From Macrostomum lignano (taxonomy: Eukaryota), in the NCBI GenBank assembly GCA_002269645.1, contig NIVC01002298.1, forward strand, positions 62,001 to 126,000: a DNA stretch of 64,000 bases. Direction: 5' to 3'. Under the pieces are notes generated by a model. That model made no database searches and was not told the origin of the DNA. It saw only the letters and a list, made by a program, of their open reading frames with translations. The translations under genes and the position numbers were made by a program. Positions 12,237-63,911 of this stretch are shown here, one piece after another (position 1 is the first letter of the stretch; each line of letters opens with the position of its first letter).

Positions 12237-15200
12237 ATGCTGTCTCACGCGCACTACCGACTGGCGGACACAGCAGCTCCCGCTATGCAGCCCGAGAATG
12301 GCACTGCTGCCGCCACAGAGCTGGACGAATTCGGCGGTGGCCTCAACGGAGCCGGTGGTGGCGGCATGACAGATCCCGGACCTGCGAATGGGCGTAAGTT
12401 TTATGCTGAACTATTTACAGTTTATATTGAATCTGAAAATCTCAGCTAGAGTAGAGAAGCTGGGAATCTACCGTTTTTGTCCAACAACTTTTCTCGCTTA
12501 CTCATAGTCATACTGAAGTGCTTGTACTCATGCCCTTCTGCTCACCCACAGTGTCTGAACTTCTTTCAATAATAGTTCAGTAAGTTCACCGTGTCTGACC
12601 CCCTTCCAGTTCACTGTTCACCCACAATGTCTGACCCCCTTCCAGTTCACTGTTCACCCACAATGTCTGACCCCCTTCCAGTTCACCCATAGTGTCTGAT
12701 GACCCCCTTACCAATCCACAGGTTCTGACCCCCTTCCAGTTCACCCATAGTGTCTGACCCCTTCCAGTTCACTGTTCACCCACAATGTCTGACCCCCTTC
12801 CAGTTCACTGTACTGTTCACCCACAATGTCTGACCTCTTTCCAGTTCACCCATAGTTCTGACCCCCCTTACCAATTCACAGGTTCTGACCCCCTTCCAGT
12901 TCACCCATAGTTCTGACCCCCCTTTCCAATTCACACAGTGTCTGACCCCCTTCTGTTCACCAGTGCCTGACCCCCCTTCTGTTCACCCAGTGTCTGACCC
13001 CCCTTCTGTTCACCCAGTGTCTGACCCCCCTTCTGTTCACCCAGTGCCTGACCCCCTTGGCCAGGTCTGATTCATAGATTTTGTCAGCAAAATTCAAATG
13101 AGATGTGTGCTAAATAACAATAGAATTTATGCTTCACAAGGCAATTTGCTTGTTTTAATGCCATGCATATTGCATTATGTTCTGTCCAGGGCCCCAGACC
13201 TTCATTGGCCATAACTATGGCAATAAATTCAGTAAATAATATACTTATGTTTTGTATATACCAACTTAATTTGCAAAATTTATATAAAACAGACCCTTGT
13301 GGCAGTAAAGCAGGTATATATTTATAGTTTTGCTTTCGTGAATAATTGTGGCTAGCTGAGGTGGGTGAACCAGTGAGGCATGACTTGTAATCTGGTGGTA
13401 GTATGAATCATTTTGACTATTGCAAATGCAAATTATGCATAATCTTTCTTTACTATGCACTATGCTGTGCCTGTGCCCAGTCCACTGCTGGGCGGATCAC
13501 TTCTGACTGGATGGGGGGGGGTCATAAATCTACTTTTTATCTCACGGAGCAATAAATCTGCTAGTGTCCAATGAGTGCGCCTATGCTAGCACCCTGCTGG
13601 TGCCCTCACCTGGCGCCCCTCATATTTCCTAGCACTCTGGCGTCCCGCATATCCCCTGTTGGCGTCCCTCATATCCCCTGTTGGCGTCTCTCTCATCCCC
13701 TGTTGGTGTCCCTCATATCCCCTGTTGGCGTCCCTCATATCCCCTGTTGGCGTCTCTCTCATCCCTGTTGGCGTCTCTCTCATCCCTGTTGGCGTCCCTC
13801 TCATCCCTGTTGGCGTCTCTCTCATCCCCTGTTGGCGTCTCTCTCATCCCTGTTGGCGTCCCTCTCATCCCATGTTGGCGCCCCTCTCATCCCCTGTTGG
13901 CGCCCCTCTCATCCCCTGTTGGCGTCCCTCTCATCCCCTGTTGGCGTCCCTCATATCCCCTGTTGGCGTCCCTCATATCCCCTGTTGGCGTCCCTCAAAT
14001 CCCCTGTTGGCGTCTCTCATATCCCCTGTTGGCGTCTCTCTCATCCCCTGTTGGCGTCTCTCTCATCCCCTGTTGGCGTCCCTCATATCCCCTGTTGGCG
14101 TCTCTCTCATCCCCTGTTGGCGTCCCTCATATCCCCTGTTGGCGTCCCTCATATCCCCTGTTGGCGTCCCTCATATCCCCTGTTGGCGTCTCTCTCATCC
14201 CCTGTTGGCGTCCCTCATATCCCCTGTTGGCGTCCCTCATATCCCCTGTTGGCGTCTCTCTCATCCCTGTTGGCGTCCCTCATATCCCCTGTTGGCGCCC
14301 CTCATCCCCTGTTGGCGTCTCTCTCATCCCCTGTTGGCGTCCCTCTCATCCCTGTTGGCGTCCCTCTCATCCCCTGTTGGCGCCCCTCTCATCCCATGTT
14401 GGCGCCCCTCTCATCCCCTGTTGGCGCCCCTCTCATCCCCTGTTGGCGTCCCTCTCATCCCCTGTTGGCGTCCCTCATATCCCCTGTTGGCGTCCCTCAT
14501 ATCCCCTGTTGGCGTCCCTCATATCCCCTTTTGGCGTCTCTCATATCCCCTGTTGGCGTCTCTCTCATCCCCTGTTGGCGTCTCTCTCATCCCCTGTTGG
14601 CGCCCCTCTCATCCCCTGTTGGCGCCCCTCATCCCCTGTTGGCGTCTCTCTCATCCCCTGTTGGCGCCCCTCTCATCCCCTGTTGGCGCCCCTCTCATCC
14701 CCTGTTGGCGTCTCTCTCATCCCCTGTTGGCATCTCTCTCATCCCCTGTTGGCGCCCCTCTCATCCCCTGTTGGCGCCCCTCATCCCCTGTTGGCGTCCC
14801 TCTCATCCCCTGTTGGCGTCTCTCTCATCCCCTGTTGGCGCCCCTCTCATCCCCTGTTGGCGTCCCTCTCATCCCCTGTTGGCGTCTCTCTCATCCCCTG
14901 TTGGCGCCCCTCTCATCCCCTGTTGGCGCCCCTCTCATCCCCTGTTGGCGTCTCTCTCATCCCCTGTTGGCGCCCCTCTCATCCCCTGTTGGCGCCCCTC
15001 TCATCCCCTGTTGGCGTCTCTCTCATCCCCTGTTGGCGCCCTCTCCCCGCCCCTGTTGTGTTAGCGCCCTTTACACTCTGGCGCCAGGGTGGGGGCGCCA
15101 AAGTGGGGGGTACTAGAGTGGGGGCGGGGCGTCAGGGTGGCGGCGCCATAACCTTGGCGCCCCTCACACTCCCTGAGCGGCTCTTTAGCATATTGACCAC

Positions 15201-37274: not shown

Positions 37275-38602
37275 CTTCGGCTGTCCGGAAAGTCGTGAGA
37301 ATGTGTCAATTAAGTAAGAAAGCAGCAAGCTGTTGAGGTGGCACACAAAAATGTTCAATAATAGACTCATATATGTCTATGGTGAAAATTCTTGTTATTC
37401 TAGTAGCAAAATTGGGGGCAGGGGCGAGCTCAGTATAAAGTGCTCAATAGCAAATGCAACGCGGTGATCAAGCTTGAAAATTTTGACAGCGAGTTCTTCA
37501 AAATGGAAGACTTCCAGGGTTATGCCTATGCTAGATACCGTCTTGGAATCTCCGCTCTCAGCTGCAATGACGAGCTGCTCAAAGTTTATGGAGATGCTGC
37601 ACCAGGTCAGTCAACGGTTTACAGATGGTATTCGAAGTTTCGTGACGATGCATTTCCCCCGGTCTCAGCTCCTCGGACTGGCCGGCCACGGTCAACAAGG
37701 ACAGCGGAACTGATCGAAACCTGTCGAGCTCTTATTGAAGAGGATCCAAAAGTTAGTGTCCGAGACCTCGCTGACTTTTTGGAAGTTGGAAAAACAACAA
37801 TGCACGAAATTTTGACTGAGATTTGCACCTTCGAAACGTTTCTGCTGTCTGGGTTCCGCATGCTCTATCCGAGGAGAACAAGACTGCTCGCATCAATTGT
37901 GCCAAGCAAATTCGCAGGCTTTTTTACGAGGGCATGGAAAACTTTTGTGACAAGTACGTTTTGGAGGATGAGACATGGGTGATATACCTGAACAACACTG
38001 GCACAAAGCAAAACAACAGGTGCTGGCTTGGCCAAGGGGATCATCGGCCCCAGGTTGTCAGGCACTCAGTCGGCAATGCAAAGACAATGCTTCTGGTTGC
38101 TTTTACTCCAAACAAGCGCTTCTCCATTGAATCCACAGCCCCAAAGCAAACTGTTTATGCAAATGGCATAGTTGAGTTCATTCGGCACACCGGAGACCTA
38201 TGGCGTACTCTCAGGTCAAGGCCAATTCATCTGACAATGCGCGACCTCACGTGGCTCGTTCTGTGCAGCAGTACATGGAGTCCGTGGAGTTCAGCTGGTG
38301 TTTCAGAGTCCTTACAGCCCAGACTTCAATTTGTGCGACCGTTTTTTGTTCAGTTGGATGAAGACTGATTTCTCCAGGCGAGTGTTCAGCGACCACAATG
38401 AAGTTCGAGAAGCTGTGTTGCAATGGGCAAGAGGCCTTGACGAAGATTGCTTGAAAAGAGAGGTTCAGCGACTCGTTGACCATTGCCAAGCTGTAATCAA
38501 CGCAAGGGGAGATTACATTACCAACTAGTACAGTTATCGTGTTTTCTGATAGTTCTGACTGGTTTTTTAAATACATTCTCACGACTTTCCGGACGGACGG
38601 AG
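37275..38602 (+). mobile_element. mariner (DD34D) DNA transposon, full length (1328 bp), inactive
   Basis: 30-bp TIRs at 37275-37304 (CTTCGGCTGTCCGGAAAGTCGTGAGAATGT) and 38573-38602 (27/30 match to the reverse complement); TA dinucleotide on both sides (37273-74, 38603-04); internal transposase with WVPHAL, DETW, DNARPH and YSPDFNLCD motifs. Confidence 0.95.
37503..38528 (+). pseudogene. mariner transposase, three frameshifts
   Basis: ATG 37503 (MEDFQGYAY...HTH GQSTVYRWYSKF...GRP); frame changes near 37820, 38232 and 38282. Restoring one base at ~38282 gives exactly 34 residues between the D of DNARPH and the D of NLCD. Confidence 0.9.
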
Positions 38603-44790: not shown

Positions 44791-44954
44791 TGGCTGCGAA
44801 GCCTTAAGTCCATTTTGTACAGTGCGTTCATTATCAGATTGCCAATAATTTTCTAAATATGGTTTTAATTGAATCAGTAATTACATTATGAATTATGTGT
44901 GAATGTACAGTATGCGTTTTTAGCCAGTACTGCTTATAGACATGTCTGTTTATG

Positions 44955-47376
<2,422 letters not shown>

Positions 47377-47723: not shown

Positions 47724-48094
<371 letters not shown>

Positions 48095-50291
48095 TTCAGT
48101 TAGCAAATGCAGGTGTGAAAAGAGCTGGCGAATTCCCGTGCGGTGACTCACTGACTGGACTCATTTCGCACTCCCGCAGCTGGTCAAAGTCCATATTTTT
48201 CTGCGGTCAACCCCCATCTGACGGCTGGGGTCGATTGCTTGATTGATGCGTGCGAACTGCCCCTTCTCGGCCTGCCGGTATGCTGCGGTGCTCAGACTGA
48301 CTTCACACAGCTGCGCCACCCTTGACTTAGGAATTCCGCGGTGGGAAAAATTCGCATATTGCTTCATCGGTCTCAGTCGGCTCCCCTGTGTGAGGTCTGA
48401 TTTATTGGAATTTTCGGGATCGGACGCGGCCTTTCAATTAATTTGACCTGCCCAACTTCTGCCACTTCGCGGTTGGGGAAAAAGATGGAATTAATCACCG
48501 ACTTACAAGCAGGCAAGGTTTTGTTTCGGGCGAGCGATAATTCTTTGGCGGGAAAGCTGGAGCTGTTAGTTTAGCATTAGAAGTTTAAGAAAACTCCATT
48601 CTAAACTCCTAATGCGAATTTAAAAACTGGCATAAACCATGCAGTCCAATATAATATGAATCGTATTGTTAAATGTTATTGAAGTATGCTCAGTGTGACT
48701 GAGTATCTATTCGGATTGATCTTTTCTCGTAATAAAGTACTCATAAGACGATTAAGCTCAATAATTAAGTCATGTGTATCAAACTAAACGTCAGCAAATT
48801 ATAGTTACATGAAGATGAAGGTGGCGAAGCCAGGATTTTTTTCAAGAGGATGTTATACAGAAATACATGTACATGTATGAAAAGCATATGAAAGTGTTCA
48901 GAAAACTGCTAAAAGAAGAAGATTGATTTTCAGTTCATGGGCTTGTGCCACTAACTATATACGGGTAGTTAAACTACAGAAAATGAGTCCTCGATCGATA
49001 CATTAATAGTTGAGACTAATTAAAACTTTCGTATTTATATCAAAGTCAACAAGCTCTTCAATAGAAGATAACAAGCAAAGTTAAGATGAAAAGTAAGACG
49101 AACTAGATTAGTTTTAAGACCGGTTTTCTAATTTTGGAACGATAAAAACTGGCAGGTTGCAGACATGCATAGGGAAATTTTGTTGCATGATTGCTTTACA
49201 GTAATACTGATTTGAAACACTTTACATGAATCTGGCATAGAAAGTATTGAAAGAAAGTACAGAAAGCCGGTAAAAAGTATTACAATAAAATAACAATTTC
49301 TTTAAGGAACATAAAATGTCGTAAACTGAAGATTAAAACTCACTAGATATATATTGAAGAAACAGTTAATTTTTCAAAAAGAGACAACAACTAGTAGGAA
49401 AAATAGCTATTTTTTCTTTTCAGTTTTTTCGTGTTCTTATATTTTCCAGGAAAGTAAGATTGCTACCGCGCTCATTTCCGCGCTTGGTTCTTTGTTCGAC
49501 AAATCATTTGACATTTTAAAGGCCAAAACCTCTCAGGTATTGTTAGTTTTCTTCCTTTAAGTCGTCTGAAAAAAGCTGTTGCATTATATGTTCCTTTTCT
49601 TAGCTGAAGAATTCATTAGTTTTTTGTTGAATTTATTTCTTGTATTTTTGTTTAGTTATCAAAGAAACGTAATGAAAAAATAGGGTTGTAAAGGAGGGCT
49701 AGCCTTAGGCCCCTACAATTACGTGGCTACGTGCTTAATGGTATGTCACTAGGGCACAAATAGGTTAGGTTTATTATTTTTGAGTGGTAGCTAAATTGGT
49801 TTTCTGGGCGGGTAAAGCAAGCGGGCTTTAGCCGTTTTTAATGGCTGAGCAACCTGCCTCGCTGCCCCCCTTTTTTATCGCCCCGACCTTGTACTTGTGC
49901 TTGCTTTTACGCGCTGTACATATGTGCTCTGACTCAATACCCATAATCCCCAGTGTGGGACTATGTTTTAATATACATTGCTCCGCTTAACGCAAGAGGG
50001 CACTGCTGCTGCTTCAAATTTATCATTTTTGCCACAATATACTTGAAAAATGCGGGCCCTACTTGCTTTGGGGCCTGCCTTGCTGTGCTCGATTGCCCAC
50101 TTGCTCATCTCTGTTCTTCCCCACCTCCACCTCTAGACATTAATTAAAAAATTCAAATTAACACTTGACAGACTTGACCATAATTTTTAATTTCAATCAG
50201 CATTTACAAAATATTCTTTCTTAGTATGACTAAGCCAATATAGTTGTCAACTTTGGTTCATAAATTTATTTCTTAGAACACATTATATAAG

Positions 50292-50627
50292 CTATTGAGG
50301 TGGGGGTGGAGAAAAAATTATTATGGTGTCTTTGGCAGTTTGAACACTGGTAATAGGCTGCTAACACCAGTTAGGCAGGTAGATTTCATGTTTGAACTGC
50401 CGCCTGTGTTGTCTTGGCACTTGTTAAGCTAGAAAATTTCACAAATAGATGTGTTTTAACTTCTCCTTGATACTCCATCTGCTGGGTCCTCAATTCTGGG
50501 GGAAGGTAGTTGTAATTGCAGTTGAATAGTCTTTTAGTGGCACAGTCATTCCAAATTGGTCCTCAGACACTGTAAAATTTGTGATCTGTTGATATGCTCA
50601 GTTTGTTACTCTTAGTAGCAAAGTAGC
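50292..50627 (-). other. CpG-decayed paralogous copy of segment 54742-55057
   Basis: Colinear by-eye alignment in direct orientation, e.g. GCCTGTGTTGTCTTGGCACTTG vs GCCTGTGTTGTCTCGGCACTCG and GATATGCTCAGTTTGTTACT vs GATATGCTCGGTTTGTTACT. Confidence 0.85.
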
Positions 50628-52859
50628 ATTGCCACCAGCATAATTTCGTATTATGGAATGATAGAGGTCTCAGAGCTTTCTTTGAGTTGAGACTAATTGG
50701 TTATTCTATACCCCATGGGCAAATGACTCAATAGAGACTAAAAGGCTTTGATTAGGAACAACTGAATAAATGAATAAATTTTGGCCGTAGCTTATTGTTA
50801 TTATTATTTGCGCAATATAAACAAATAATAATACCTGGTAATAATGAAAATTACTTCCTTAGCTCCTATATTGTATACTAATATATGCTATTAGACTTTT
50901 ATTACAAATGAAAATAAATATGCCAAATAAAAGATAAAAAATGACAATCAATATTTTAGGCTCATAATATTTTAATCTTTTTAAAAAAGATAATTAAAAA
51001 TTATTAATATTTACTTAACTATGACTTTAGTCAGAATCAATTTATTTTAATTACATGTATTTTAGATTATAGAATTATATTATTAGAAAAGTTAAACACA
51101 ATTTCTTTTTGATATTTTTTTATTTTTGATCAAAATTTAGTTATTCTATCTATGCACATAGTCAGATAGACTACCCCATAGTTTGGAAGGCAACATGTAT
51201 ATCATGAAATCGTGGTATACAACAAGGGTACTTGCTATTTTTCAGTGTACATCAGCATACATCTCAATGTATATAATAATAGAAAATTTTTGGCTTATAT
51301 CTGTGGCATAGCTACATGCATGTTAGAATCAATTAAAGTGACTTTATGTAAATTAAGCTACACGCAACACTATCAACATGGAACACAGAATAATGAAAAA
51401 ATTTAAACTTTTTGCCATAAAAAACCTTTTTTCTCTCCTATTTTTAGCAAATAAAAAGTATTTTATTTTATAATTGTCTTTTCTCCATGCACATTGCAAA
51501 AGTGTATAATTTTAAGTTTGTTAATCTACATAAATAATGAATTCAAAGAAGGAAAAATGTGTACAACTTAGGTATACATAGTTGAAAACATTTTTGTCCC
51601 AATGTACAAATGTGGTCATATAGGCTATTTTTCTTCTACTAGTCCTGGCATACACTAATACACAATCCAAACTATGGAGACTACCAAGCTTGAACTTATT
51701 CATTTTTTGTACACTAACTATGTACATTGATAAGGACTTGGAACTTGGTCTACCTACTATTTATATGCCAAGCAGCCAAACTATATACCAATAAGTTTGC
51801 CAAGCCTTTTTGTACACCAATTTTTGTATATCAATTTGTATATATTTGTATATATTAGATCTCTCTAAGTCTCTATATGCTGATATCAAAGCTTTCCACG
51901 GCAGACGGGATAAGTTGGCAAGGTCATTGGAGTTGTTGAAGTCAACAACACAGCATCTAGGGTTGTCAGCAATGGCCTTCTGTATAAAACGAAGTCATGT
52001 ATTATTGCTTTGGTTTAGAATCAACTTCCATACAACTACATGTACCATAATTCAACTGAATATCAATAAAATCAGCATGAATTAGGGAACATTGTGTCGC
52101 CTTTTGTGTTCTCACTAAGCCGGGAAATCTTTAAAGGTAGCTCCAATCTTCCCAGTCCTCAAAGTCAAGCTGCTCTTCAAATTCACAAAGCCATTTCATC
52201 TTTCTCTGGTGCATGCTGCTTTTAAAATGTATTTTGGAAAAGCAGGAAAGCTGAAACTGAACAGAATTAGAAATAATTTTTAGTATATAGGATGTTAGTT
52301 AAAAATGGCAGTAAAGCAATGTTTGGCAGTAAAAGTCGCACAACTTAGCCTATCTTTCCTAAAGAGTTCGAAAAGCCTTTTTTTCAACTAAAGAGAAAGA
52401 GAAGAAAAGTGAGATCTTAGGCATATGTAGTTATAAAAACAACTATAAGAGTACACACTCTAGAAATACACACTCTAGAAATATATACTAAGAGATTGTA
52501 GGAGTATAGCTATAAATTTAATAGAAATGAAATGAAGCAGAAAAGTACAAAGTAATTGTATATAGCATTATTAAACATGCACAAAGCACCACAACGTTCT
52601 TAAAAATGAAGTAATAAATGGACTTCTCGTATTAAAAAATGCATTAATATACACTTGAGTATAGCTTACTAATAGTAAAACATAGTTTTCAAAGGACGAG
52701 CAAATTGGCAGGTTAGAGGGGACAGAGCAGGTTCGAGGGGACAACAAAGAATGGACAAATAGACAAATATGAGTAAATAGACAAACCCGAAAACACAAAG
52801 CAGCGAATTATATGATGACAGAAAAGTCAGCACACATGGCTGGGACAAGTCAGACTCAT

Positions 52860-55600
52860 TAAATTCCCAAAGTGAAGATATTCACAAATTCACAATGGAA
52901 TGTCACGACAAGTAAAGAAATGAAGTGACACGATGGAAGTTAAGCACAACTGTGGTCGATAGATTATTTCTTGGCACGCTTGAAATGACTCTTCCACATA
53001 TTGATGAAGCTGTTCATTTGGTCGTTGACTTCGCGTCGCTGTTCTGCGGTAAATCCTCTCAGGGTCGCGTGAGTTTTCACATGCGATGAGTAAGCCCGCT
53101 TACTTGGCTTAACTGGGCTCCTGCTCTTTGGTCCGTTGTTTGTCAACAGCTCTTTGATTATCAAATTGATTTTTTGCCCAATGCTCGAGTCCATCTTCCC
53201 AATGGATGCCCTCCGCCTTTTTTAGAATTTCTTCACTTTGGGAATTGCCGCATGTCCGAAGGACTACGCTGACTAGGCTGGCTTTTTCTTTGCTAGATTA
53301 GCCACGTCGGCATCTGACCTGCGGCTGTCGTCAGCACTCCGTCGTCGGGAATTACCACGTGCTGGAGAGGTAAAGCTGACCGTGCTTACTCTTTTGTGTG
53401 CTGGACTAGCCACATCGTCATCTGAGCCGCCGCACTCGTCAGCACTCGTCGTCGGAGCAGACCGGGCTCTCGTTGGGATCAGCAATTACGGCGGATTTGC
53501 CTTTAGAAAAAGAAGAACGTGGCTTTGCCTCGAAGGACGCACTGCTCGATTCTCTTACAGCAGTTTTTTGGCCTTCATGGATGAGACAGAACTTTGAAAC
53601 ACGTTCACAGCCGCATCGCGTCGAGGCTTGTCTTGTACTGTTGGCGACAAGCGGCGAGAACTTGAGGAAGCGACGTTAGCAGCCGCATCGCGTCGAGGCT
53701 TGTCTTGTACTGTTGGCGACAAGCGGCGAGAACCTGAAGAAACGACGTCATCAGCCGCATCGCGTCGAGGCTTGTCTTGTACTGTTGGCGACAAGCGGCG
53801 AGAACCTGAAGAAACGACGTTAGCAGCCGCATCGCATCGCGTCGAGGCTTGTCTTGTACTGTTGGCGACAAGCGGCGAGAACCTGAAGAAACGACGTTAG
53901 CAGCCGCATCGCATCGCGTCGAGGCTTGTCTTGTACTGTTGGCGACAAGCGGCGAGAACCTGAAGAAACGACGTTAGCAGCGTTGAGTGGATACTCCGTT
54001 GGAAGAATTGTTGACGCTGGCCTGAATGAGCCGTCAGAAATAAATTCACTGTCGTGTTGACCCTTAATCTCCGCCCTGGAAAACGAATAATGAAGTACAA
54101 AGCAAAAGATAAAAGAATCAGAAGACAGAAAAGGCAAGTGAAGTACAGGTGTCTAGTTGGTCTGGAGATGGCCTGGTAGGTCTTGAAATCCCACCGCTGC
54201 CACCAGTGAAGTACTTGCTCTTGCCTGTGGTTCTTGACTAGAAGCTTCCGATCCGATAGAGGCGCTGCCACCAATGGAGTGCTGAGGGCCGTCTCGGGTT
54301 GTCTCGGGATGGTCTGGCTGATCTCCTAGCGCTGGGCGATGACCTCTGGTCGGTGGTTTCTTAGTTCTCGTAGCGTAGGTAGTGCTGCCACCAGCTTCGC
54401 AGAGTCGCAGCCTTCGGTGAGGTGCTGAGCTCGTATAAGCAAATAACTAAGACGAGAGAGACAGACTCGCACTTCGTGCAGATTTAGCAGTTCTTGAGCA
54501 GAGGTGTCCGCAGTCAGCAGTCCCTGCCGGGCTAGTGCGGGGTTAGAGCGATGGTGCTAGCTTCGGGCGATCTAAGCTGGCCTGCTAATTCATAGCAGGA
54601 GCAAAGATCAAACCTGCACACAACTGAGAGCCTTGGGCTGAAGGGAATCTCGGAGACTGGTTGAAATAGAGAGGCAGATAAACGCTTGTCTGAGCCAAGC
54701 CATGAGAGGGGCTGCATCTATAGGGAGAATCGTTTGCACCATAGTGAGGTAGGGGCGGAGAAGAAAATAAACTTTGAAATCGGTCAGTTGCTGACACCAA
54801 TGAGATGGGGCGGTTAAACTTTAAATTGCTGCCTGTGTTGTCTCGGCACTCGTAAAGCCGGAAAATTTCACGAACTGATGCGTTTAGCTTCTCCTTTGAT
54901 ACTCCGTCTGCCGGGTCCTCAATTCCTGGGGAGGGTAGTCGTAATTCGCAGTCGAGCAGTCTTTTAACGGCACGGTCGTTCAATTGGGTCCTCAGACGCC
55001 GTAAATTTCGTAAACTGTCGATATGCTCGGTTTGTTACTATCAGTAGTAAAGTAGCGAACACATGGAAACGACAAGCATGAGAGCAAAATTGGTTAAAAC
55101 AAACGTATAAATAGTATTGGACACGACTAATCCCAGGGGGTGGGGCACCGAGTGGGACAGAGAAAGGAGCACCCAAAGGAAAAGGGGAAAAACCGGCCGC
55201 TGGACACAGTAAAACAGACAAGGGATGGGCAGCGATTGGAGCAAACAGGGAAGCAACGGACGGGACAACCAGGGGAACAGTCAAGGGAACAACCGATGAA
55301 AACAATGACGTCAGTCCGTCAGTAGATGGAAAACCGCCTTGTTCGCGCTAGCGACCGCTGTCGTCCTCCGAGTGGTAGACCGGCCTACCACAATAGCACG
55401 AAAGACCCCGCGGAGAGTCATGGGTGACTCTGTTGCTATTTTTAGCAACAAGCGAGCGGGTTCTGCCTCAGGAGGCAGGGGTCCTGGCGCACGTGATGTC
55501 CCATAAACACAAGCCCAGCGTACAATGATAAATCATTGCACTTTGGACTAAAGAAGGAAGCAGGCCCTGTCATGTGACTGGCTCACATGACAGGGGGGAA
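52860..55600 (-). mobile_element. Unclassified, decayed repeat-like element with fragmented minus-strand ORFs and a hairpin-rich leader
   Basis: Broken ORFs (54585-54983, 53555-53794, 53273-53485, 52964-53194), an in-frame 72-bp repeat, a second decayed copy at 50.3-50.6 kb, and hairpins at 55372-55595. No RT, integrase or transposase motif was recognised, so the class and boundaries are unsupported. Confidence 0.35.
53608..53980. repeat. 72-bp tandem repeat (5 copies; two carry a 5-nt GCATC duplication)
   Basis: CCGCATCG recurs at 53611, 53683, 53755, 53827, 53904. Confidence 0.95.
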
Positions 55601-56124
55601 AGGGCCCACAAGTGAAGGCACTCGTGACCTTGGGACCGGAAAACAGGACAGCACTCCAAATTTGGAGATGCCAAACAGAGAACGAAACAGAGGCAGGCCA
55701 GACCAAGCTGTCTGGGCACTGCAAAACGAAAACACGAGACAAAAAGGGGCAAACGAGGACAAACAGACAGACAGGCAAACGGGCAAGGGACAGGCAACTG
55801 CCCAGCGGCAGACAGAAACCTGGGGCGAGGGCGAGGGAAACAGCTGACTAGTGCGGCGCCTAACTAAACTATCGACTCACTACACAAGTGTTTTGCGCAA
55901 GAAATTCATATGACACAATATCTGGCAATACGGAGAGAGAATAGGGTTGGCATAATTTGTTAACAGAAATCACCACAAAATTACCCGAACAACAGTAAAA
56001 ATTCTTCATGTTGACTAAGTGGTAGGAATCTAATCTGTACTACCCAAGATCACTACCCAATGTCTGAAGTTCTGCTAGAAGAGTGTTTTCAAATGCCTCA
56101 GTTTACATGAGTGACGCAAGGCCG

Positions 56125-58590
56125 ACAGGTAGATGCCCAGATACAGATGATGAAAGCCGAAATGTGTCCACAGAAATCACCACAAATGATCTGGATGCTA
56201 TCATGCATTTGGAGTACTTGCAAAGAAGCCGATCTGAACACCCAAAAGTCCATTTAACTCTGCCATTTCTGTTAAAAGTGCCTTTTATCTACGTAACTGG
56301 ACATATATACATGACTCAAATATGGCAGGTGGGTGCCCAGACTCAGTTAGTGAAAGCCGAAATGTGTCCACAGAAATCACCATAAATGATCTGGATGCTA
56401 TCATGCATTTGGAGTACTTGCAAAGAAGCCGATCTGAACACCCAAAAGTCCATTTAACTCTGCCATTTCTGTTAAAAGTGCCTTTTATCTACGTAACTGG
56501 ACATATATACATGACTCAAATATGGCAGGTGGGTGCCCAGACTCAGTTAGTGAAAGCCGAAATGTGTCCACAGAAATCACCACAAATGATCTGGATGCTA
56601 TCATGCATTTGGAGTACTTGCAAAGAAGCCGATCTGAACACCCAAAAGTCCATTTAACTCTGCCATTTCTGTTAAAAGTGCCTTTTATCTACGTAACTGG
56701 ACATATATACATGACTCAAATATGGCAGGTGGGTGCCCAGACTCAGTTAGTGAAAGCCGAAATGTGTCCACAGAAATCACCACAAATGATCTGGATGCTA
56801 TCATGCATTTGGAGTACTTGCAAAGAAGCCGATCTGAACACCCAAAAGTCCATTTAACTCTGCCATTTCTGTTAAAAGTGCCTTTTATCTACGTAACTGG
56901 ACATATATACATGACTCAAATATGGCAGGTGGGTGCCCAGACTCAGTTAGTGAAAGCCGAAATGTGTCCACAGAAATCACCACAAATGATCTGGATGCTA
57001 TCATGCATTTGGAGTACTTGCAAAGAAGCCGATCTGAACACCCAAAAGTCCATTTAACTCTGCCATTTCTGTTAAAAGTGCCTTTTATCTACGTAACTGG
57101 ACATATATACATGACTCAAATATGGCAGGTGGGTGCCCAGACTCAGTTAGTGAAAGCCGAAATGTGTCCACAGAAATCACCACAAATGATCTGGATGCTA
57201 TCATGCATTTGGAGTACTTGCAAAGAAGCCGATCTGAACACCCAAAAGTCCATTTAACTCTGCCATTTCTGTTAAAAGTGCCTTTTATCTACGTAACTGG
57301 ACATATATACATGACTCAAATATGGCAGGTGGGTGCCCAGACTCAGTTAGTGAAAGCCGAAATGTGTCCACAGAAATCACCACAAATGATCTGGATGCTA
57401 TCATGCATTTGGAGTACTTGCAAAGAAGCCGATCTGAACACCCAAAAGTCCATTTAACTCTGCCATTTCTGTTAAAAGTGCCTTTTATCTACGTAACTGG
57501 ACATATATACATGACTCAAATATGGCAGGTGGGTGCCCAGACTCAGTTAGTGAAAGCCGAAATGTGTCCACAGAAATCACCACAAATGATCTGGATGCTA
57601 TCATGCATTTGGAGTACTTGCAAAGAAGCCGATCTGAACACCCAAAAGTCCATTTAACTCTGCCATTTCTGTTAAAAGTGCCTTTTATCTACGTAACTGG
57701 ACATATATACATGACTCAAATATAGCAGGTGGGTGCCCAGACTCAGTTAGTGAAAGCCGAAATGTGTCCACAGAAATCACCACAAATGATCTGGATGCTA
57801 TCATGCATTTGGAGTACTTGCAAAGAAGCCGATCTGAACACCCAAAAGTCCATTTAACTCTGCCATTTCTGTTAAAAGTGCCTTTTATCTACGTAACTGG
57901 ACATATATACATGACTCAAATATGGCAGGTGGGTGCCCAGACTCAGTTAGTGAAAGCCGAAATGTGTCCACAGAAATCACCACAAATGATCTGGATGCTA
58001 TCATGCATTTGGAGTACTTGCAAAGAAGCCGATCTGAACACCCAAAAGTCCATTTAACTCTGCCATTTCTGTTAAAAGTGCCTTTTATCTACGTAACTGG
58101 ACATATATACATGACTCAAATATGGCAGGTGGGTGCCCAGACTCAGTTAGTGAAAGCCGAAATGTGTCCACAGAAATCACCACAAATGATCTGGATGCTA
58201 TCATGCATTTGGAGTACTTGCAAAGAAGCCGATCTGAACACCCAAAAGTCCATTTAACTCTGCCATTTCTGTTAAAAGTGCCTTTTATCTACGTAACTGG
58301 ACATATATACATGACTCAAATATAGCAGGTGGGTGCCCAGACTCAGTTAGTGAAAGCCGAAATGTGTCCACAGAAATCACCACAAATGATCTGGATGCTA
58401 TCATGCATTTGGAGTACTTGCAAAGAAGCCGATCTGAACACCCAAAAGTCCATTTAACTCTGCCATTTCTGTTAAAAGTGCCTTTTATCTACGTAACTGG
58501 ACATATATACATGACTCAAATATGGCAGGTGGGTGCCCAGACTCAGTTAGTGAAAGCCGAAATGTGTCTACAGAAATCACCACAAAATTA
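56125..58590. repeat. 200-bp satellite, 12 nearly identical full copies plus a diverged first unit
   Basis: GAAAGCCGAAATGTGTCCACAG recurs every 200 nt from 56152 to 58552; ORF track repeats at 200-nt period. Confidence 0.98.
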
Positions 58591-58884
58591 TCTGAACAAC
58601 AGTAAACATTCTTCATGTTGACTGAGTGGTAAAAATCCAATAAGTCTGTAAGACCGATGGGTTTAACTTCATTACTTAAAGTTATTATGCTATAGATAAA
58701 ATTTGCATATTTTTATTATATTCATTAGTTATATGTGTCAAGTTTTTAAATAACCATGTAAAAATTTTAATCAACCTTCATTATGACCATAGTAGAAACT
58801 ATGGTTAATAGTTGCTTGTTTTACAACAAATAGTTACATTTACTTTCTATCTGCAGCTTTTTAGACCACCATCAGCTGCTCATC

Positions 58885-61800
58885 ATGTTCTCCTTCCTGC
58901 GCAAACAAGAAGATCATGACTCTGAAACCTTTGACTCTGTGGCCAGTGGCATGAGGAAGATCTATAAAAACAAATTGTTGCCACTTGAGGAAGCCTACAA
59001 GTTCCATGAGTTTCACCAGCCAGCACTGGAGGATGCTGACTTTTACAGGTGAGTCTTTTGGCCGCAGTGCCTGAGTGATTTTAATTAGACAGATTTTTGG
59101 ACTGGCCAATTTTAATATTTTTACTCCTATTCTCAAGGAGGGGATTTTGAGATTTCAAGTTTGAGTTGAATTGGTGAGATTTGGGGTTCTGATTCTCAAA
59201 GGGACATTCGGGTGACTTTTCTAATCTCACATTGAGATTTTTGGGATTCATAACCTCAAATGGAAGATTTTTGGGATTCATTATCTTATTGAGGAGATTT
59301 TTGGGATTCATGATCTCAAATGGAAGATTTTTGGGATTCATTATCTTATTGAGGAGATTTTTGGGATTCATGATCTCAAAAGAGACTTTTTGGGATTCAT
59401 GATCTCAAATGAGAGATTTTTGGGATTCATTATCTTATTGAGAAGATTTTTGGGATTCATGATCTCAAAAGAGACTTTTTGGGATTCATGATCTCAAATG
59501 GGAGATTTTTGGGATTCATTATCTTATTGAGGAGATTTTTGGGATTCATGATCTCAAAAGAGACTTTTTGGGATTCATGATCTCAAATGGGCGATTTTTG
59601 GGATTCATGATCTCAAATGGGAGATTTTGGAAGTCATAATCTCAAATAGGAGATTTTGGGATTCACGATCTCAATGGGGAGATTTTGGGATTCATGATCG
59701 TAAAAGAAGTCCTTGATTCCTAAAACCAACGTGGATGTTTACTGCGAGCTGGGTTTCTTGTTGTGAAAGACTTGCTTTTATATTTTAAATCACCTGTGGA
59801 GGTAGATTTCTGCAGTCTTACTAAATATCTCTCCCATTAATCTGTTGCAGCAAGCCAATGATCCTGCTGGTTGGTCAGTACTCAACAGGCAAGACCACCT
59901 TCATCAAATACCTGCTTGAGACCGATTTCCCCGGCATTCGGATTGGCCCGGAGCCAACTACAGATCGCTTCATTGCCGTGATGCACGATGAGCACGAGGG
60001 AGTTGTGCCCGGCAACGCCCTGGTGGTGGACACCCAGAAGCCCTTCCGGCCGCTGTCTCGGTTCGGCAACGCCTTTCTGAACCGCTTCCAGTGCTCAACT
60101 CTCAATAACGAAGTGCTCAAGTCAATTTCTATTATTGATACTCCCGGGATCTTGTCTGGTAAGTCACTGCTGAAGGAGAAGGGCTTGGGAACTGCTTCAT
60201 GGATCACTGCATGACCGAGTGTATGACCTGCTTCATGGATCACTGCATGACCCAGTGTATGACCTGCTTCATGGATCACTGCATGACCCAGTGTATGACC
60301 TTCATAGATCACTGCATGACCCAGTGTATGACCTTCATAGATCACTGCATGACCCAGTGTATACCTGCTTCATGGATCACTGCATGACCCAGTGTATTAC
60401 CTGCTCCATGGATCACTGTATGACCCAGTGTATACCTGCTTCATGGATCACTGCATGACCCAGTGTATTACCTGCTCCATGGATCACTGTATGACCCAGT
60501 GTATTACCTGCTCCATGGATCACTGTATGACCCAGTGTATGACCTTCATAGATCACTGCATGACCCAGTGTATACCTGCTTCATGGATCACTGTATGACC
60601 CAGTGTATTACATGCTTCATGGATCACTGCATGACCCAGTGTATTACCTGCTCCATGGATCACTGTATGACCCAGTGTATACCTGCTCCATGGACCACTG
60701 TATGACCCAGTGTATGACCTGCTCCATGGATCACTGTATGACCCAGTGTATTACCTGCTCCATGGATCACTGTATGACCCAGTGTATGACCTTCATAGAT
60801 CACTGCATGACCCAGTGTATACCTGCTTCATGGATCACTGTATGACCCAGTGTATTACATGCTTCATGGATCACTGCATGACCCAGTGTATTACCTGCTC
60901 CATGGATCACTGTATGACCCAGTGTATACCTGCTCCATGGACCACTGTATGACCCAGTGTATGACCTGCTCCATGGATCACTGTATAACCCAGTGAATGA
61001 CCTGCTTCATGGACTACTATTAAACCGGCACACCTTAGGCGAGAAGCAGCGGGTGGACCGCGGCTACTCCATGAACGAGGTGATCGAATGGTTCGCCGCC
61101 CGGGTTGACCGGATCGTCCTGCTGTTCGACGCGCACAAGCTGGACATCTCTGACGAGTTCAAGGCCGTCATCGAGAGCATGAAGGGCTACGAGGATAAGA
61201 TTCGGATTGTGCTCAACAAAGCCGATATGATAGACTCGCAACAGCTCATGCGGGTGTACGGAGCGCTCATGTGGAGCTTAGGTAGGCTTGATCCCTGTTG
61301 CGAATTGTAATTTAATCATTCCAAGCCTGCTCATATCTTTGATTCCAGGCCTTTAATGCTATGAGTCTCATTAGACCTCTAATCCTTATTAGGTCTCTAA
61401 TCCTCTGCTCCCCATGCATCTCTAATCCTCTGATCCCCATGGCTCTCTAATCCTCTGATCCCCATGCCTCTCTAATCCTCTGATCCCCATGGCTCTCTAA
61501 TCCTCTGATCCCCATGGCTCTCTAATCCTCTGATCCCCATGCCTCTCTAATCCTCTGATCCCCATGGCTCTCTAATCCTCTGATCCCCATGGCTCTCAAA
61601 TCCTCTGATCCCCATGGCTCTCAAATCCTCTGATCCCCATGCCTCCATAATCCTCTGATCCCCATGGCTCTCTAATCCTCTGATCCCCATGCCTCTATAA
61701 TCCTCTGATCCCCATGGCTCTCAAATCCTCTGATCCCCATGCCTCTCAAATCCTCTCATCCCCATGCCTCTCAAATCCTCTGATCCCCATGCCTCTCAAA

Positions 61801-63911
61801 TCCTCTGATCCCCATGCCTCTCAAATCCTCTCATCCCCATGCCTCTCAAATCCTCTGATCCCCATGGCTCTCAAATCCTCTCATCCCCATGGCTCTCTAA
61901 TCCTCTGATCCCCGTGGCTCTATAATCCTCTGATCCCCATGCCTCTCTAATCCTCTGATCCCCATGGCTCTCTAATCCTCTGATCCCCATGGCTCTCAAA
62001 TCCTCTGATCCCCATGGCTCTCAAATCCTCTGATCCCCATGCCTCTCAAATCCTCTGATCCCCATGGCTCTCTAATCCTCTGATCCCCATGCCTCTATAA
62101 TCCTCTGATCCCCATGGCTCTCAAATCCTCTGATCCCCATGCCTCTCAAATCCTCTCATCCCCATGCCTCTCAAATCCTCTGATCCCCATGCCTCTCAAA
62201 TCCTCTGATCCCCATGCCTCTCAAATCCTCTCATCCCCATGCCTCTCAAATCCTCTGATCCCCATGGCTCTCAAATCCTCTCATCCCCATGGCTCTCTAA
62301 TCCTCTGATCCCCGTGGCTCTATAATCCTCTGATCCCCATGGCTCTCAAATCCTCTGATCCCCATGCCTCTCAAATCCTCTGATCCCCATGGCTCTCAAA
62401 TCCTCTGATCCCCATGGCTCTCAAATCCTCTGATCCCCATGGCTCTAATCCTCTGATCCCCATGCCTCTCTAATCCTCTGATCCCCATGCCTCTCTAATC
62501 CTCTGATCCCGATGCCTCTCAAATCCTCTGATCCCCATGCCTCTAATCCTCTGATCCCCATGGCTCTCAAATCCTCTGATCCCCATGGCTCTCAAATCCT
62601 CTGATCCCCATGGCTCTCAAATCCTCTGATCCTCATGCCTCTCAAATCCTCTGATCCCCATGGCTCTCAAATCCTCTGATCCCCATGGCACTAATCCTCT
62701 GATCCCCATGGCTCTAATCCTCTGATCCCCATGGCTCTATAATCCTCTGATCCCCATGGCTCTCAAATCCTCTGATCCCCATGCCTCTCAAATCCTCTGA
62801 TCCTCATGCCTCTCAAATCCTCTGATCCCCATGCCTCTCAAATCCTCTGATCCCCATGCCTCTAATCCTCTGATCCCCATGGCTCTCAAATCCTCTGATC
62901 CCCATGGCTCTATAATCCTCTGATCCCCATGGCTCTCAAATCCTCTGATCCCCATGGCTCTATAATCCTCTGATCCCCATGGCTCTCAAATCCTCTGATC
63001 CCCATGGCTCTATAATCCTCTGATCCCCATGGCTCTCAAATCCTCTGATCCCCATGGCTCTCAAATCCTCTGATCCTCATGCCTCTCAAATCCTCTGATC
63101 CCCATGGCTCTCAAATCCTCTGATCCCCATGCCTCTAATCCTCTGATCCCCATGGCTCTCAAATCCTCTGATCCCCATGGCTCTATAATCCTCTGATCCC
63201 CATGGCTCTAATCCTCTGATCCCCATGGCTCTCAAATCCTCTGATCCCCATGGCTCTATAATCCTCTGATCCCCATGGCTCTAATCCTCTGATCCCCATG
63301 GCTCTAATCCTCTGATCCTCATGCCTCTCTAATCCTCTGATCCCCATGGCTCTCAAATCCTCTGATCCCCATGCCTCTCCAATCCTCTGATCTCCATGGC
63401 TCCCTAATCCTCTGATCCCCATGCCTCTCCCGCAGGCAAGGTGCTGTACACCCCCGAGGTGGCCCGGGTGTACATCGGCAGTTTCTGGAACGAGCCGCTG
63501 AAGTTCGAGACCAACAAGCGCCTGTTCGAGCTGGAGGCGCAGGACCTGTTCCGCGACCTGCAGTCGCTGCCGCGCAACGCCACGCTGCGCAAGCTCAACG
63601 ACCTGATCAAGCGGGCCCGGCTGGCCAAGACCCACGCCTACATCATCGCCGCACTGCGCAAGGAGATGCCCTCAGTGTTCGGCAAGGACAACAAGAAGAA
63701 GCAGCTGATCCGGGACCTGCAGCAGATCTACACCAACGTGGCCAGGGAGCACAACATCAGCCTGGGGGACCTGCCCAACCTGGCCAGAATGCAGCAGGCT
63801 CTTGAGCACGCCGACTTCTCCAAGTTTCAGCCGTTAAAGGAGCGGCTGATCAACACTGTGGACGCCATGCTTAGCGACGATATCGCTAAGCTGATGCAGC
63901 AGATTCCGCAG
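58885..63911 (+). CDS. EHD1: EH domain-containing protein (EHD1/RME-1/Past1), first four coding exons; continues beyond the window
   Basis: Exons 58885-59048, 59851-60158, 61039-61281, 63436-63911, all GT-AG with matching phases. Motifs: MFSFLRK...LLPLEEAYKFHEFHQPALEDADF, P-loop MILLVGQYSTGKT, IGPEPTTDRF, IIDTPGILSGEKQR, FDAHKLDISDEF, VLNKAD, RVYIGSFW, LNDLIKRARLAK. The EH domain lies past 64000. Acceptor-like CTGCAG at 58851-58856 in the 5'UTR. Confidence 0.96.
59200..59700. repeat. ~29-bp minisatellite (GAGATTTTTGGGATTCATGATCTCAAAT) in EHD intron 1
   Basis: Visible tandem units. Confidence 0.9.
60190..61005. repeat. 36-bp minisatellite (CCTGCTTCATGGATCACTGCATGACCCAGTGTATGA) in EHD intron 2
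   Basis: Visible units; source of the DHCMTQC pseudo-ORFs. Confidence 0.95.
61400..63430. repeat. 25-bp minisatellite (CTCTAATCCTCTGATCCCCATGGCT) filling EHD intron 3
   Basis: About 80 units; a 400-bp internal duplication (identical pseudo-ORFs at 61714 and 62114); the last unit forms the acceptor tract. Confidence 0.97.

What the first reader, a model, noticed from the sequence alone, without database searches (positions are those of the whole stretch)
50292..55057. Paired copies show complete CpG erasure in one copy, a fossil record of germline cytosine methylation
Segment 50292-50627 aligns with 54742-55057. In the core (54831-55057) I count 19 CpGs in the intact copy, and none remains CpG in the other. 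Examples: TCTCGGC>TCTTGGC, CTCCGTC>CTCCATC, TGCCGGG>TGCTGGG, AGTCGTA>AGTTGTA, GCACGGT>GCACAGT, GACGCCGTA>GACACTGTA, TGTCGAT>TGTTGAT, GCTCGGT>GCTCAGT. About 10 become TG, 7 become CA, one becomes TA and one is ambiguous, while non-CpG positions are far better conserved. CpG>TpG/CpA on both strands is the established signature of 5mC deamination. Yet the sister copy 4.4 kb away, the mariner and several arrays are CpG-rich, so methylation here was targeted or age-dependent rather than global. If this is a flatworm, a group where DNA methylation is low or disputed, this is direct sequence evidence of a repeat-targeted methylation and decay system. It may also explain the AT-rich domain at 48.6-52.8 kb.
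Basis: partly seen in the sequence, partly recalled or inferred. Interest (0 to 1): 0.8.

Follow-up and report, generated by a model that had tools for sequence, protein, structure and literature searches.

The report
Local CpG decay in flatworm repeat
In the flatworm Macrostomum lignano, one of two copies of a 0.3-kb duplicated segment lies in a 2.5-kb patch that has lost almost all its CpGs by the mutations expected from DNA methylation, while nearby DNA shows no such decay; it is a clear example of a known process, not a new one.

Summary
A formal alignment (50293-50627 vs 54742-55056) shows 21 CpGs in the 54.7-kb copy and none kept in the 50.3-kb copy: 12 became TG, 6 CA, 1 TA, 1 AG, 1 indel. 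Only 101 of 293 other dinucleotides changed (p = 8e-10), and there is no GC-to-AT drift outside CpG (8 vs 8).

The window is Macrostomum lignano (Mlig_3_7, NIVC01002298.1). Published reviews say this flatworm keeps DNMT1 and DNMT3 and has low-level 5mC.

The decayed copy sits at the edge of a contiguous 2.5-kb CpG desert (50095-52594, CpG o/e 0.21 against a window background of 0.77) that includes non-repeat DNA. Elsewhere CpGs are not hypermutable. Three near-identical genomic copies of window 5.5-12.1 kb give C>T rates of 1.7% at CpG and 1.5% at non-CpG. Tandem arrays give 1.9% vs 2.7%.

The best reading is focal, regional germline CpG methylation followed by deamination. It is not repeat-targeted. 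It is not age-dependent, because paralogues are equally old. It explains only a small part of the AT-richness.

Polarity could not be rooted, because no third copy was obtainable. This is a new instance of a known phenomenon, of modest interest.

The parts
50293..50627 (+). Copy A of the ~0.33-kb duplicated segment, the CpG-erased copy (1 CpG, o/e 0.08, GC 40.3%)
   Evidence: Alignment; counts
54742..55057 (+). Copy B, the CpG-replete copy (21 CpGs plus one straddling the 3' end, o/e 1.23, GC 47.0%)
   Evidence: No protein, Pfam, Rfam or RNA-structure signal
50095..52594 (.). Contiguous 2.5-kb CpG desert containing copy A at its left edge. It has 13 CpGs against 61.6 expected (o/e 0.21), TpG+CpA o/e about 1.0-1.4 and GC 31%. 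It is the inferred focally methylated domain.
   Evidence: No ORF, Pfam or NUMT signal
48595..50094 (.). Left part of the AT-rich domain, with normal CpG content (o/e 0.81). It shows that AT-richness and CpG loss are separable.
53000..56125 (.). CpG-replete surroundings of copy B (o/e 0.94), including the 77-bp CpG-rich array at 53610-53981
13057..13637 (.). A second, small CpG-poor patch (o/e 0.21). The only two substitutions against its duplicate locus L002 are both CpG<->TpG/CpA.
58595..59233 (.). A third CpG-poor bin (o/e 0.20), covering the 5' flank and first coding exon of the EHD-like gene

Best explanation
A roughly 2.5-kb intergenic block of the Macrostomum lignano genome (window 50095-52594) was, and perhaps still is, CpG-methylated in the germ line, while the surrounding DNA was not.

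Spontaneous deamination of 5-methylcytosine turned CpG into TpG, or into CpA when the other strand was hit. A 335-bp segment inside this block has an unmethylated paralogue 4.4 kb away. That paralogue preserves the original CpGs and so acts as an internal control.

The per-base transition rate at CpG in copy A must have been at least about 11-22 times the non-CpG C/G rate. In copy B it was about the same as at other bases.

Shown here: the duplication, the CpG-specific two-strand transition pattern, the regional extent of the depletion, and the absence of CpG hypermutability elsewhere.

Inferred: that 5mC laid down by DNMT1/DNMT3 is the cause, and that the CpG state is ancestral. What targets methylation to this block is unknown.
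For: 1. All 21 of B's CpGs are lost in A, and 18 of them by a single transition to TG (12) or CA (6). The strand split is compatible with symmetry (binomial p = 0.24).
2. Non-CpG sites in the core differ at about 10.6%, with balanced GC>AT and AT>GC changes (8 vs 8).
3. Losing 21 of 21 implies a loss hazard of at least 2.0 per CpG (95% bound). Non-CpG C/G transitions are at most 0.09 per base. B lost at most 1 of 22 or more CpGs.
4. Copy A lies in the only large CpG desert of the window. The block without A still has o/e 0.27 (12 observed, 44 expected) with a TpG/CpA excess. The array-masked window is at 0.77 and nearly all 500-bp bins lie at 0.53-1.15.
5. Baseline from three near-identical genomic copies of window 5.5-12.1 kb (L002, L003): C>T/G>A at 11/648 CpG bases vs 36/2371 non-CpG C/G bases, odds ratio 1.12, p = 0.72. 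In the 12 tandem arrays that carry CpG, transitions are 1.9% at CpG and 2.7% at non-CpG C/G.
6. In a second CpG-poor patch (13057-13637) the only two differences from L002 are CpG<->TpG/CpA.
7. Literature: M. lignano retains DNMT1 and DNMT3 and has low-level 5mC (PMC11292947, PMC9246332, PMC10658182).
Against: - No third copy or outgroup could be obtained, so polarity is argued from mechanism and composition rather than rooted.
- No methylation data for the locus were available, and Wasik et al. 2015 could not be read.
- Only one paralogous pair exists in the window, so this is a single case.
- The array control may be blurred by homogenisation, and its variants are not independent events.
- The evidence rests on two substitutions.
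- Nothing identifies why this block would be a methylation target. It has no gene, TE protein or RNA family.
Confidence: 0.7

Rival explanations
1. Inherited depletion. The CpG-poor state was acquired elsewhere or earlier. For example, the 2.5-kb block including copy A is a relocated piece of a formerly methylated region, or an old element of a CpG-poor family. On this view the present location was never methylated.
For: The block has a sharply different composition (GC about 31%) from its neighbours. The nature of the block and of the repeat is unresolved.
Against: - If B's CpGs are ancestral, A's losses postdate the A/B split, and A is contiguous with the rest of the desert.
- No terminal repeats, target-site duplications or other copies mark the block as an insertion.
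- This rival still needs a CpG-specific decay process, so it differs only in where and when the decay happened.
Confidence: 0.13
2. Reversed polarity. The ancestral segment was CpG-free, and copy B gained about 20 CpGs through TpG>CpG and CpA>CpG changes, for example by selection for CpG, GC-biased gene conversion, or conversion from an unseen CpG-rich copy.
For: No outgroup is available, and one site is CpG in A but TpG in B.
Against: - It needs 12 of 35 TpG and 6 of 20 CpA in A to have become CpG, while other A/T sites changed at about 5-10%.
- No known mutational process does this.
- Biased gene conversion would raise GC in all contexts, yet non-CpG changes are balanced (8 vs 8).
- A CpG-free ancestor at 40% GC would itself require prior CpG decay.
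- B merely matches the local and window norm (o/e 0.94 and 0.77). A is the outlier.
Confidence: 0.05
3. A methylation-independent process produced the pattern. Candidates are general AT-biased drift in an AT-rich isochore, deaminase editing of a retroelement cDNA, or a RIP-like repeat-induced mutation.
For: Copy A lies in an AT-rich domain, and the sequence is duplicated, which is the substrate for RIP in fungi.
Against: - AT drift: there is no GC>AT excess outside CpG (8 vs 8), and the adjacent AT-rich DNA at 48595-50094 keeps its CpGs (o/e 0.81).
- cDNA editing: it would be strand-asymmetric and in TC/CC contexts. Here both strands are hit and only at CpG.
- RIP: it would mutate both copies, favours CpA>TpA and depletes CpA/TpG. 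Here one copy is untouched, TpG/CpA are in excess, and the depletion extends 2 kb into unique DNA.
Confidence: 0.07
4. Assembly or sequencing artefact, or foreign DNA. The AT-rich block is a mis-joined or contaminant sequence, for example from the diatom food organism or the mitochondrion.
For: The compositional break is abrupt, and the assembly is known to be difficult and redundant (PMC5730564).
Against: - Copy A is clearly homologous to copy B, which lies in typical flatworm sequence on the same contig.
- Sequencing errors are not CpG-specific transitions.
- Translations under mitochondrial codes give no Pfam hits.
- The contig is a long-read assembly of 185 kb.
Confidence: 0.03

Closest known systems
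CpG decay of methylated DNA by 5-methylcytosine deamination, as seen in aged repeat copies in vertebrate genomes and in low CpG o/e gene bodies of mosaic-methylated invertebrates
   Same: CpG-specific hypermutation to TpG and CpA on both strands. It produces local CpG o/e far below background together with a TpG/CpA excess. The rate excess is of order 10-fold or more.
   Different: Here the affected unit is a short (2.5-kb) intergenic block in a genome that is otherwise CpG-replete (o/e about 0.77) and shows no CpG hypermutability. The two genes that could be examined (DHCR24, EHD-like exons) are not depleted. The pattern therefore matches neither vertebrate-type global methylation nor the canonical gene-body mosaic.
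Low-level CpG methylation with conserved DNMT1/DNMT3 reported for Macrostomum lignano (Wasik et al. 2015, as cited in PMC11292947, PMC9246332 and PMC10658182)
   Same: It is the same organism. Sparse methylation would predict exactly a mostly CpG-replete genome with rare decayed patches.
   Different: The reports accessible here give only 'low levels'. One review states that the genomic pattern is unknown in free-living flatworms. Whether the reported 5mC maps to blocks like this one was not testable.
Repeat-induced point mutation (RIP) of fungi
   Same: A duplicated sequence carries dense C>T/G>A transitions.
   Different: Only one copy is mutated, the context is CpG rather than CpA, TpG/CpA are enriched rather than depleted, and the depletion covers 2 kb of non-duplicated DNA. 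The process is also unknown in animals.

Membership tests
5mC-deamination CpG decay (methylation footprint) | Substitutions concentrated at CpG relative to all other contexts | tested here: met
   21/21 CpG dinucleotides changed vs 101/293 others, p = 7.6e-10
5mC-deamination CpG decay (methylation footprint) | Products are TpG and CpA, i.e. transitions on either strand | tested here: met
   12 TG, 6 CA, 1 TA (double hit), 1 AG, 1 indel. The strand split is not different from 1:1 (p = 0.24)
5mC-deamination CpG decay (methylation footprint) | No comparable C>T/G>A excess or AT drift outside CpG | tested here: met
   Core: 7 transitions at 76 non-CpG C/G sites; GC>AT 8 vs AT>GC 8
5mC-deamination CpG decay (methylation footprint) | CpG is the ancestral state (polarity) | tested here: inconclusive
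   No third copy was found in the window, in L002/L003, or in the protein and metagenome searches. Composition argues for CpG being ancestral: A is the outlier and B matches background
5mC-deamination CpG decay (methylation footprint) | The organism possesses maintenance and de novo CpG methyltransferases | not tested
   Taken from literature only: DNMT1 and DNMT3 are conserved in M. lignano (PMC11292947, PMC9246332)
5mC-deamination CpG decay (methylation footprint) | 5mC present at the locus in germline cells | not testable with these tools
   Needs bisulfite or nanopore data; none accessible
Canonical invertebrate gene-body (mosaic) methylation | The CpG-depleted domain coincides with a transcribed gene body | tested here: not met
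   The block lies 6.3-8.8 kb upstream of the EHD-like gene start at 58885 and has no ORF with a Pfam hit. The DHCR24 ORF and EHD exons 2-4 have CpG o/e 0.68-1.05, and DHCR24 shows no CpG hypermutability. An unannotated non-coding transcript cannot be excluded.
Repeat-targeted methylation / genome defence against TEs | Depletion follows repeat boundaries and affects repeat copies generally | tested here: not met
   The desert extends about 2 kb beyond the 335-bp repeat into DNA with no partner. The sister copy, the mariner (o/e 0.61-0.85) and 12 arrays are not affected.
Fungal-type RIP | Both copies mutated, CpA>TpA bias, TpG/CpA depleted | tested here: not met
   B is intact, the changes are at CpG, and TpG+CpA o/e is 1.2-1.4 in the block
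Transposable-element family (SINE/MITE-like) for the duplicated segment | Multiple dispersed copies, terminal repeats or target-site duplications, or a recognisable coding or RNA module | tested here: not met
   There are only two copies in 64 kb plus 43 kb of extra loci. No TIR or TSD was seen at the ends. No protein, Pfam or Rfam hit. The whole genome could not be searched.

The most novel reading that the evidence does not exclude
Macrostomum lignano may have a non-canonical methylome in which DNMT1/DNMT3 mark only rare, sharply bounded blocks of 0.6-2.5 kb. On the evidence of this window, these blocks are intergenic or 5'-flanking rather than gene bodies, tandem arrays or the mariner. The marking would have been stable long enough in the germ line to erase every CpG. 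If so, CpG deserts would be a sequence-only map of the flatworm's methylation targets and a handle on what recruits methylation there.
Probability: 0.3. Interest if true: 0.55.

Novelty: new member of a known kind. Interest (0 to 1): 0.33.

Why it matters
CpG decay is textbook. The value here is that a paralogous pair gives a clean internal control in a phylum where DNA methylation has been contested, and in a species for which accessible reviews say only that 5mC is 'low' and that its genomic pattern is undescribed.

Combined with the controls run here, the locus indicates that germline methylation in this flatworm is focal rather than global, gene-body or repeat-wide. The controls found no CpG hypermutability in ordinary DNA, in one gene body or in tandem arrays.

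This gives a cheap prediction that existing bisulfite data or new nanopore data can test: CpG deserts should be the methylated islands. It does not reveal a new mechanism.

Tried and rejected
Searches for a third copy, to root the changes. All failed:
- nhmmer with the A/B profile on the window and on L002/L003 found nothing.
- Self-BLAST of the window showed A/B as the only dispersed non-array pair.
- A protein search with copy B's 149-codon open frame gave no hits.
- An exact-product look-up of the 132-aa ORF found nothing on record.
- A metagenome pattern scan gave 0 matches.
- An exact look-up of ten ATG-ORFs between 43 and 56 kb, intended to reach the homeologous A/B locus, found none in the collection.
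- A search with the EHD exon returned only proteins at 70% identity or less, so the homeologous EHD genes could not be used as anchors.

Attempts to identify the repeat or the block. All were empty:
- Pfam.
- Rfam gave only a sub-threshold SNORA12-like hit at 49620-49720.
- RNA folding z-scores were +1.5 and +0.7.
- A NUMT test with mitochondrial genetic codes gave no Pfam hit.
- Extended homology of the flanks, including purine/pyrimidine-coded alignment that ignores transitions, was no better than shuffles.

Literature: the primary M. lignano genome and bisulfite paper (Wasik et al. 2015) is not held.

Rejected readings: general AT drift, an age difference between the copies, RIP, cDNA editing, and contamination. 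Reasons are given under the rival explanations.
Full report
**Identity of the window**

The 511-aa intronless ORF at 6712-8247 (FAD_binding_4, delta(24)-sterol-reductase-like) is encoded on NCBI contig NIVC01002298.1 of assembly GCA_002269645.1, at 66712-72247. Window coordinate plus 60000 therefore gives the record coordinate. [quoted passage not shown] The other named members of the ORF's 90% cluster are M. lignano proteins.

About 37% of the window is tandem arrays. This fits the published description of the genome.

**The observation**

- A local alignment pairs 50293-50627 (copy A) with 54742-55056 (copy B), in the same orientation and about 4.43 kb apart. The BLAST core of 239 bp is 82% identical.
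A has one.
- None of B's CpGs is conserved in A. Twelve are TG, six CA, one TA, one AG and one falls at an indel.
- The only CpG in A (50401) is TG in B.
- At the dinucleotide level, 21/21 CpGs changed against 101/293 others (p = 7.6e-10). No other dinucleotide exceeds 53%.
- Outside CpG the core differs at 21/198 positions, with 8 GC>AT and 8 AT>GC changes.
- The GC difference between the copies (47.0% vs 40.3%) is almost exactly the 20 CpG-associated changes over about 315 bp.

**Rates**

- Losing 21 of 21 CpGs implies a per-CpG loss probability of at least 0.87, i.e. a hazard of at least 2.0 (95% bound). That is at least 1.0 per CpG base.
- Non-CpG C/G transitions total 7/76 = 0.09 per base over both lineages.
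- The CpG transition rate in A's lineage was therefore at least about 11-fold the non-CpG rate if all other divergence is on A's branch. It was about 22-fold if divergence is split evenly.
- B lost at most one of 22 or more CpGs, so in B CpG behaved like any other site.
- Two paralogues are equally old, so this is a rate difference between locations.

**Context**

- After masking arrays, the window has CpG o/e 0.77, and almost every 500-bp bin lies between 0.53 and 1.15.
- The outliers below 0.35 are 13057-13637, 58595-59233 and four of the five bins spanning 50095-52594, where the fifth (50595-51094) is 0.38.
- That 2.5-kb block holds 13 CpGs against 61.6 expected (o/e 0.21). Without copy A it is still 0.27, and TpG+CpA o/e is mostly 1.2-1.4.
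- Copy A occupies only the left 335 bp of this desert. The rest has no partner anywhere in the window.
- The flanks of A and B are unrelated, even in a purine/pyrimidine alphabet that is blind to transitions.
- The AT-rich DNA immediately to the left (48595-50094) has o/e 0.81, and B's surroundings (53000-56125) have 0.94.
- The depletion is therefore a regional property with fairly sharp edges. It is not a property of the repeat, and it is not co-extensive with the AT-rich domain.
- CpG loss can explain roughly 2 GC points in the non-repeat part of the block. It cannot explain the 30% vs 50% contrast.

**Controls for the rest of the genome**

1. *Tandem arrays.* Twelve arrays have a consensus unit containing CpG. 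Deviations from the consensus are transitions at 1.9% of CpG-base instances and at 2.7% of non-CpG C/G instances. Homogenisation and non-independence of units are caveats.
2. *Duplicate loci.* The DHCR24 cluster member P0069 led to two further loci of the same assembly, L002 (NIVC01001081.1) and L003 (NIVC01000326.1). They are 98-99% identical to window 5.5-12.1 kb in unique DNA. With three sequences, singletons can be polarised by majority. Over 5901 sites, C>T/G>A occurred at 11/648 CpG bases and 36/2371 non-CpG C/G bases (odds ratio 1.12, p = 0.72).
3. *Frequency of deserts.* In 27 kb of unmasked L002/L003 sequence the only CpG-poor bin is the counterpart of 13057-13637.
4. *The second patch.* In that 580-bp patch the only two substitutions between the window and L002 are TCGTG/TCATG and GGTGC/GGCGC. 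Both are CpG<->TpG/CpA. The numbers are small, but they suggest CpG-specific change continues in such patches.

Ordinary DNA here, including a gene body, shows no CpG hypermutability. Copy A's excess of at least 11-fold is a local exception.

**What the pieces are**

- The duplicated segment could not be classified. Its 149-codon open frame on the minus strand of B has no homologue in 5.8 billion proteins and no Pfam hit.
- There is no Rfam match and no folding signal.
- No terminal repeats or target-site duplications are visible.
- The desert itself has no ORF with a Pfam hit under the standard or mitochondrial codes.
- A and B therefore lie upstream of that gene. They are separated from it by a 2.5-kb array of 200-bp units, and no gene could be recognised between about 45 and 58.8 kb.
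- The EHD exons other than the first, and the DHCR24 ORF, are not CpG-depleted. The canonical invertebrate gene-body pattern is therefore not what is seen.

**Mechanism**

The best-supported account is focal germline CpG methylation of the 2.5-kb block, followed by 5mC deamination.

- The chemistry and the signature are established knowledge.
- The enzymes are reported for this species. Reviews citing Wasik et al. 2015 state that M. lignano conserves DNMT1 and DNMT3 and has low-level 5mC (PMC11292947, PMC9246332, PMC10658182). The planarian Schmidtea and parasitic flatworms have lost these enzymes.
- A mostly CpG-replete genome with rare decayed islands is what sparse methylation predicts.
- Two steps remain inferred. 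The first is polarity, since no outgroup was obtainable. However, B merely matches the background while A is the outlier, and a CpG-free ancestor would itself need prior decay. The second is the presence of 5mC at the locus.
- What recruits methylation to this block is unknown.

**Rivals**

The rivals considered are:
- depletion inherited from elsewhere;
- CpG gain in B;
- methylation-independent processes (AT drift, cDNA editing, RIP-like mutation);
- artefact or foreign DNA.

Each is contradicted by specific results given in the rival-explanations section. Together I give them about 0.3.

**Verdict**

The methylation-type decay and its local nature hold.
- 'Repeat-targeted', 'age-dependent' and 'explains the AT-rich domain' do not hold, or hold only marginally.
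- The premise that methylation is disputed does not apply to this species.
- This is a clean new example of a known process, with some value as a pointer to the unusual, focal layout of methylation in this flatworm.

Noticed in passing
window 6712-8247; L002 10001-11536; L003 10001-11536: An intronless 511-aa DHCR24-like (FAD_binding_4) gene is present on three contigs of the assembly. Flanking unique DNA is 98-99% identical. This is consistent with the known redundancy and neopolyploidy of M. lignano.
   Followed up: partly
L003 13285-19438, relative to window ~9925: One of the three duplicate loci carries about 6.1 kb of extra sequence, largely tandem arrays, that is absent from the window at the corresponding point.
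   Followed up: no
window 13057-13637 and 58595-59233: Two further short CpG-poor bins (o/e 0.21 and 0.20). The first shows only CpG-type differences from its duplicate locus. The second covers the 5' flank and first coding exon of the EHD-like gene.
   Followed up: partly
window 58885-63911 (+): An EHD-like gene (Dynamin_N, DUF5600) whose introns are filled by large minisatellites (59234-59699, 60192-61013, 61394-63429). A 12-unit array of 200-bp repeats (56126-58594, 97-99% identical) sits immediately upstream.
   Followed up: partly
window 610-1221, 1875-2282 (+): Ankyrin-repeat exons of a TRP-channel-like gene. Minisatellites (22-, 16-, 18- and 15-bp units) lie in the intervening sequence.
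   Followed up: no
window 37440-38368 (+): A mariner/Mos1-type transposase remnant (HTH_48, HTH_32) split over two overlapping frames, so probably frameshifted. Its CpG o/e is 0.61-0.85, i.e. not decayed.
   Followed up: partly
window 52862-52888 / 53220-53246: A 27-nt inverted repeat (89% complementary) brackets a 76-aa basic ORF (52964-53194, minus strand) just to the right of the CpG desert. The ORF has no Pfam hit and is not in the protein collection.
   Followed up: partly
window 44943-47376 and 47724-48094: A 2.4-kb (TGTC)3-type array with extreme AT skew (-0.9) and zero CpG, followed by a (ATAG)n microsatellite. Both lie directly upstream of the AT-rich domain.
   Followed up: no
window 49620-49720 (+): A sub-threshold Rfam match to the H/ACA snoRNA family SNORA12 (25.3 bits against a gathering score of 45, E = 0.11). 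It is probably chance.
   Followed up: no
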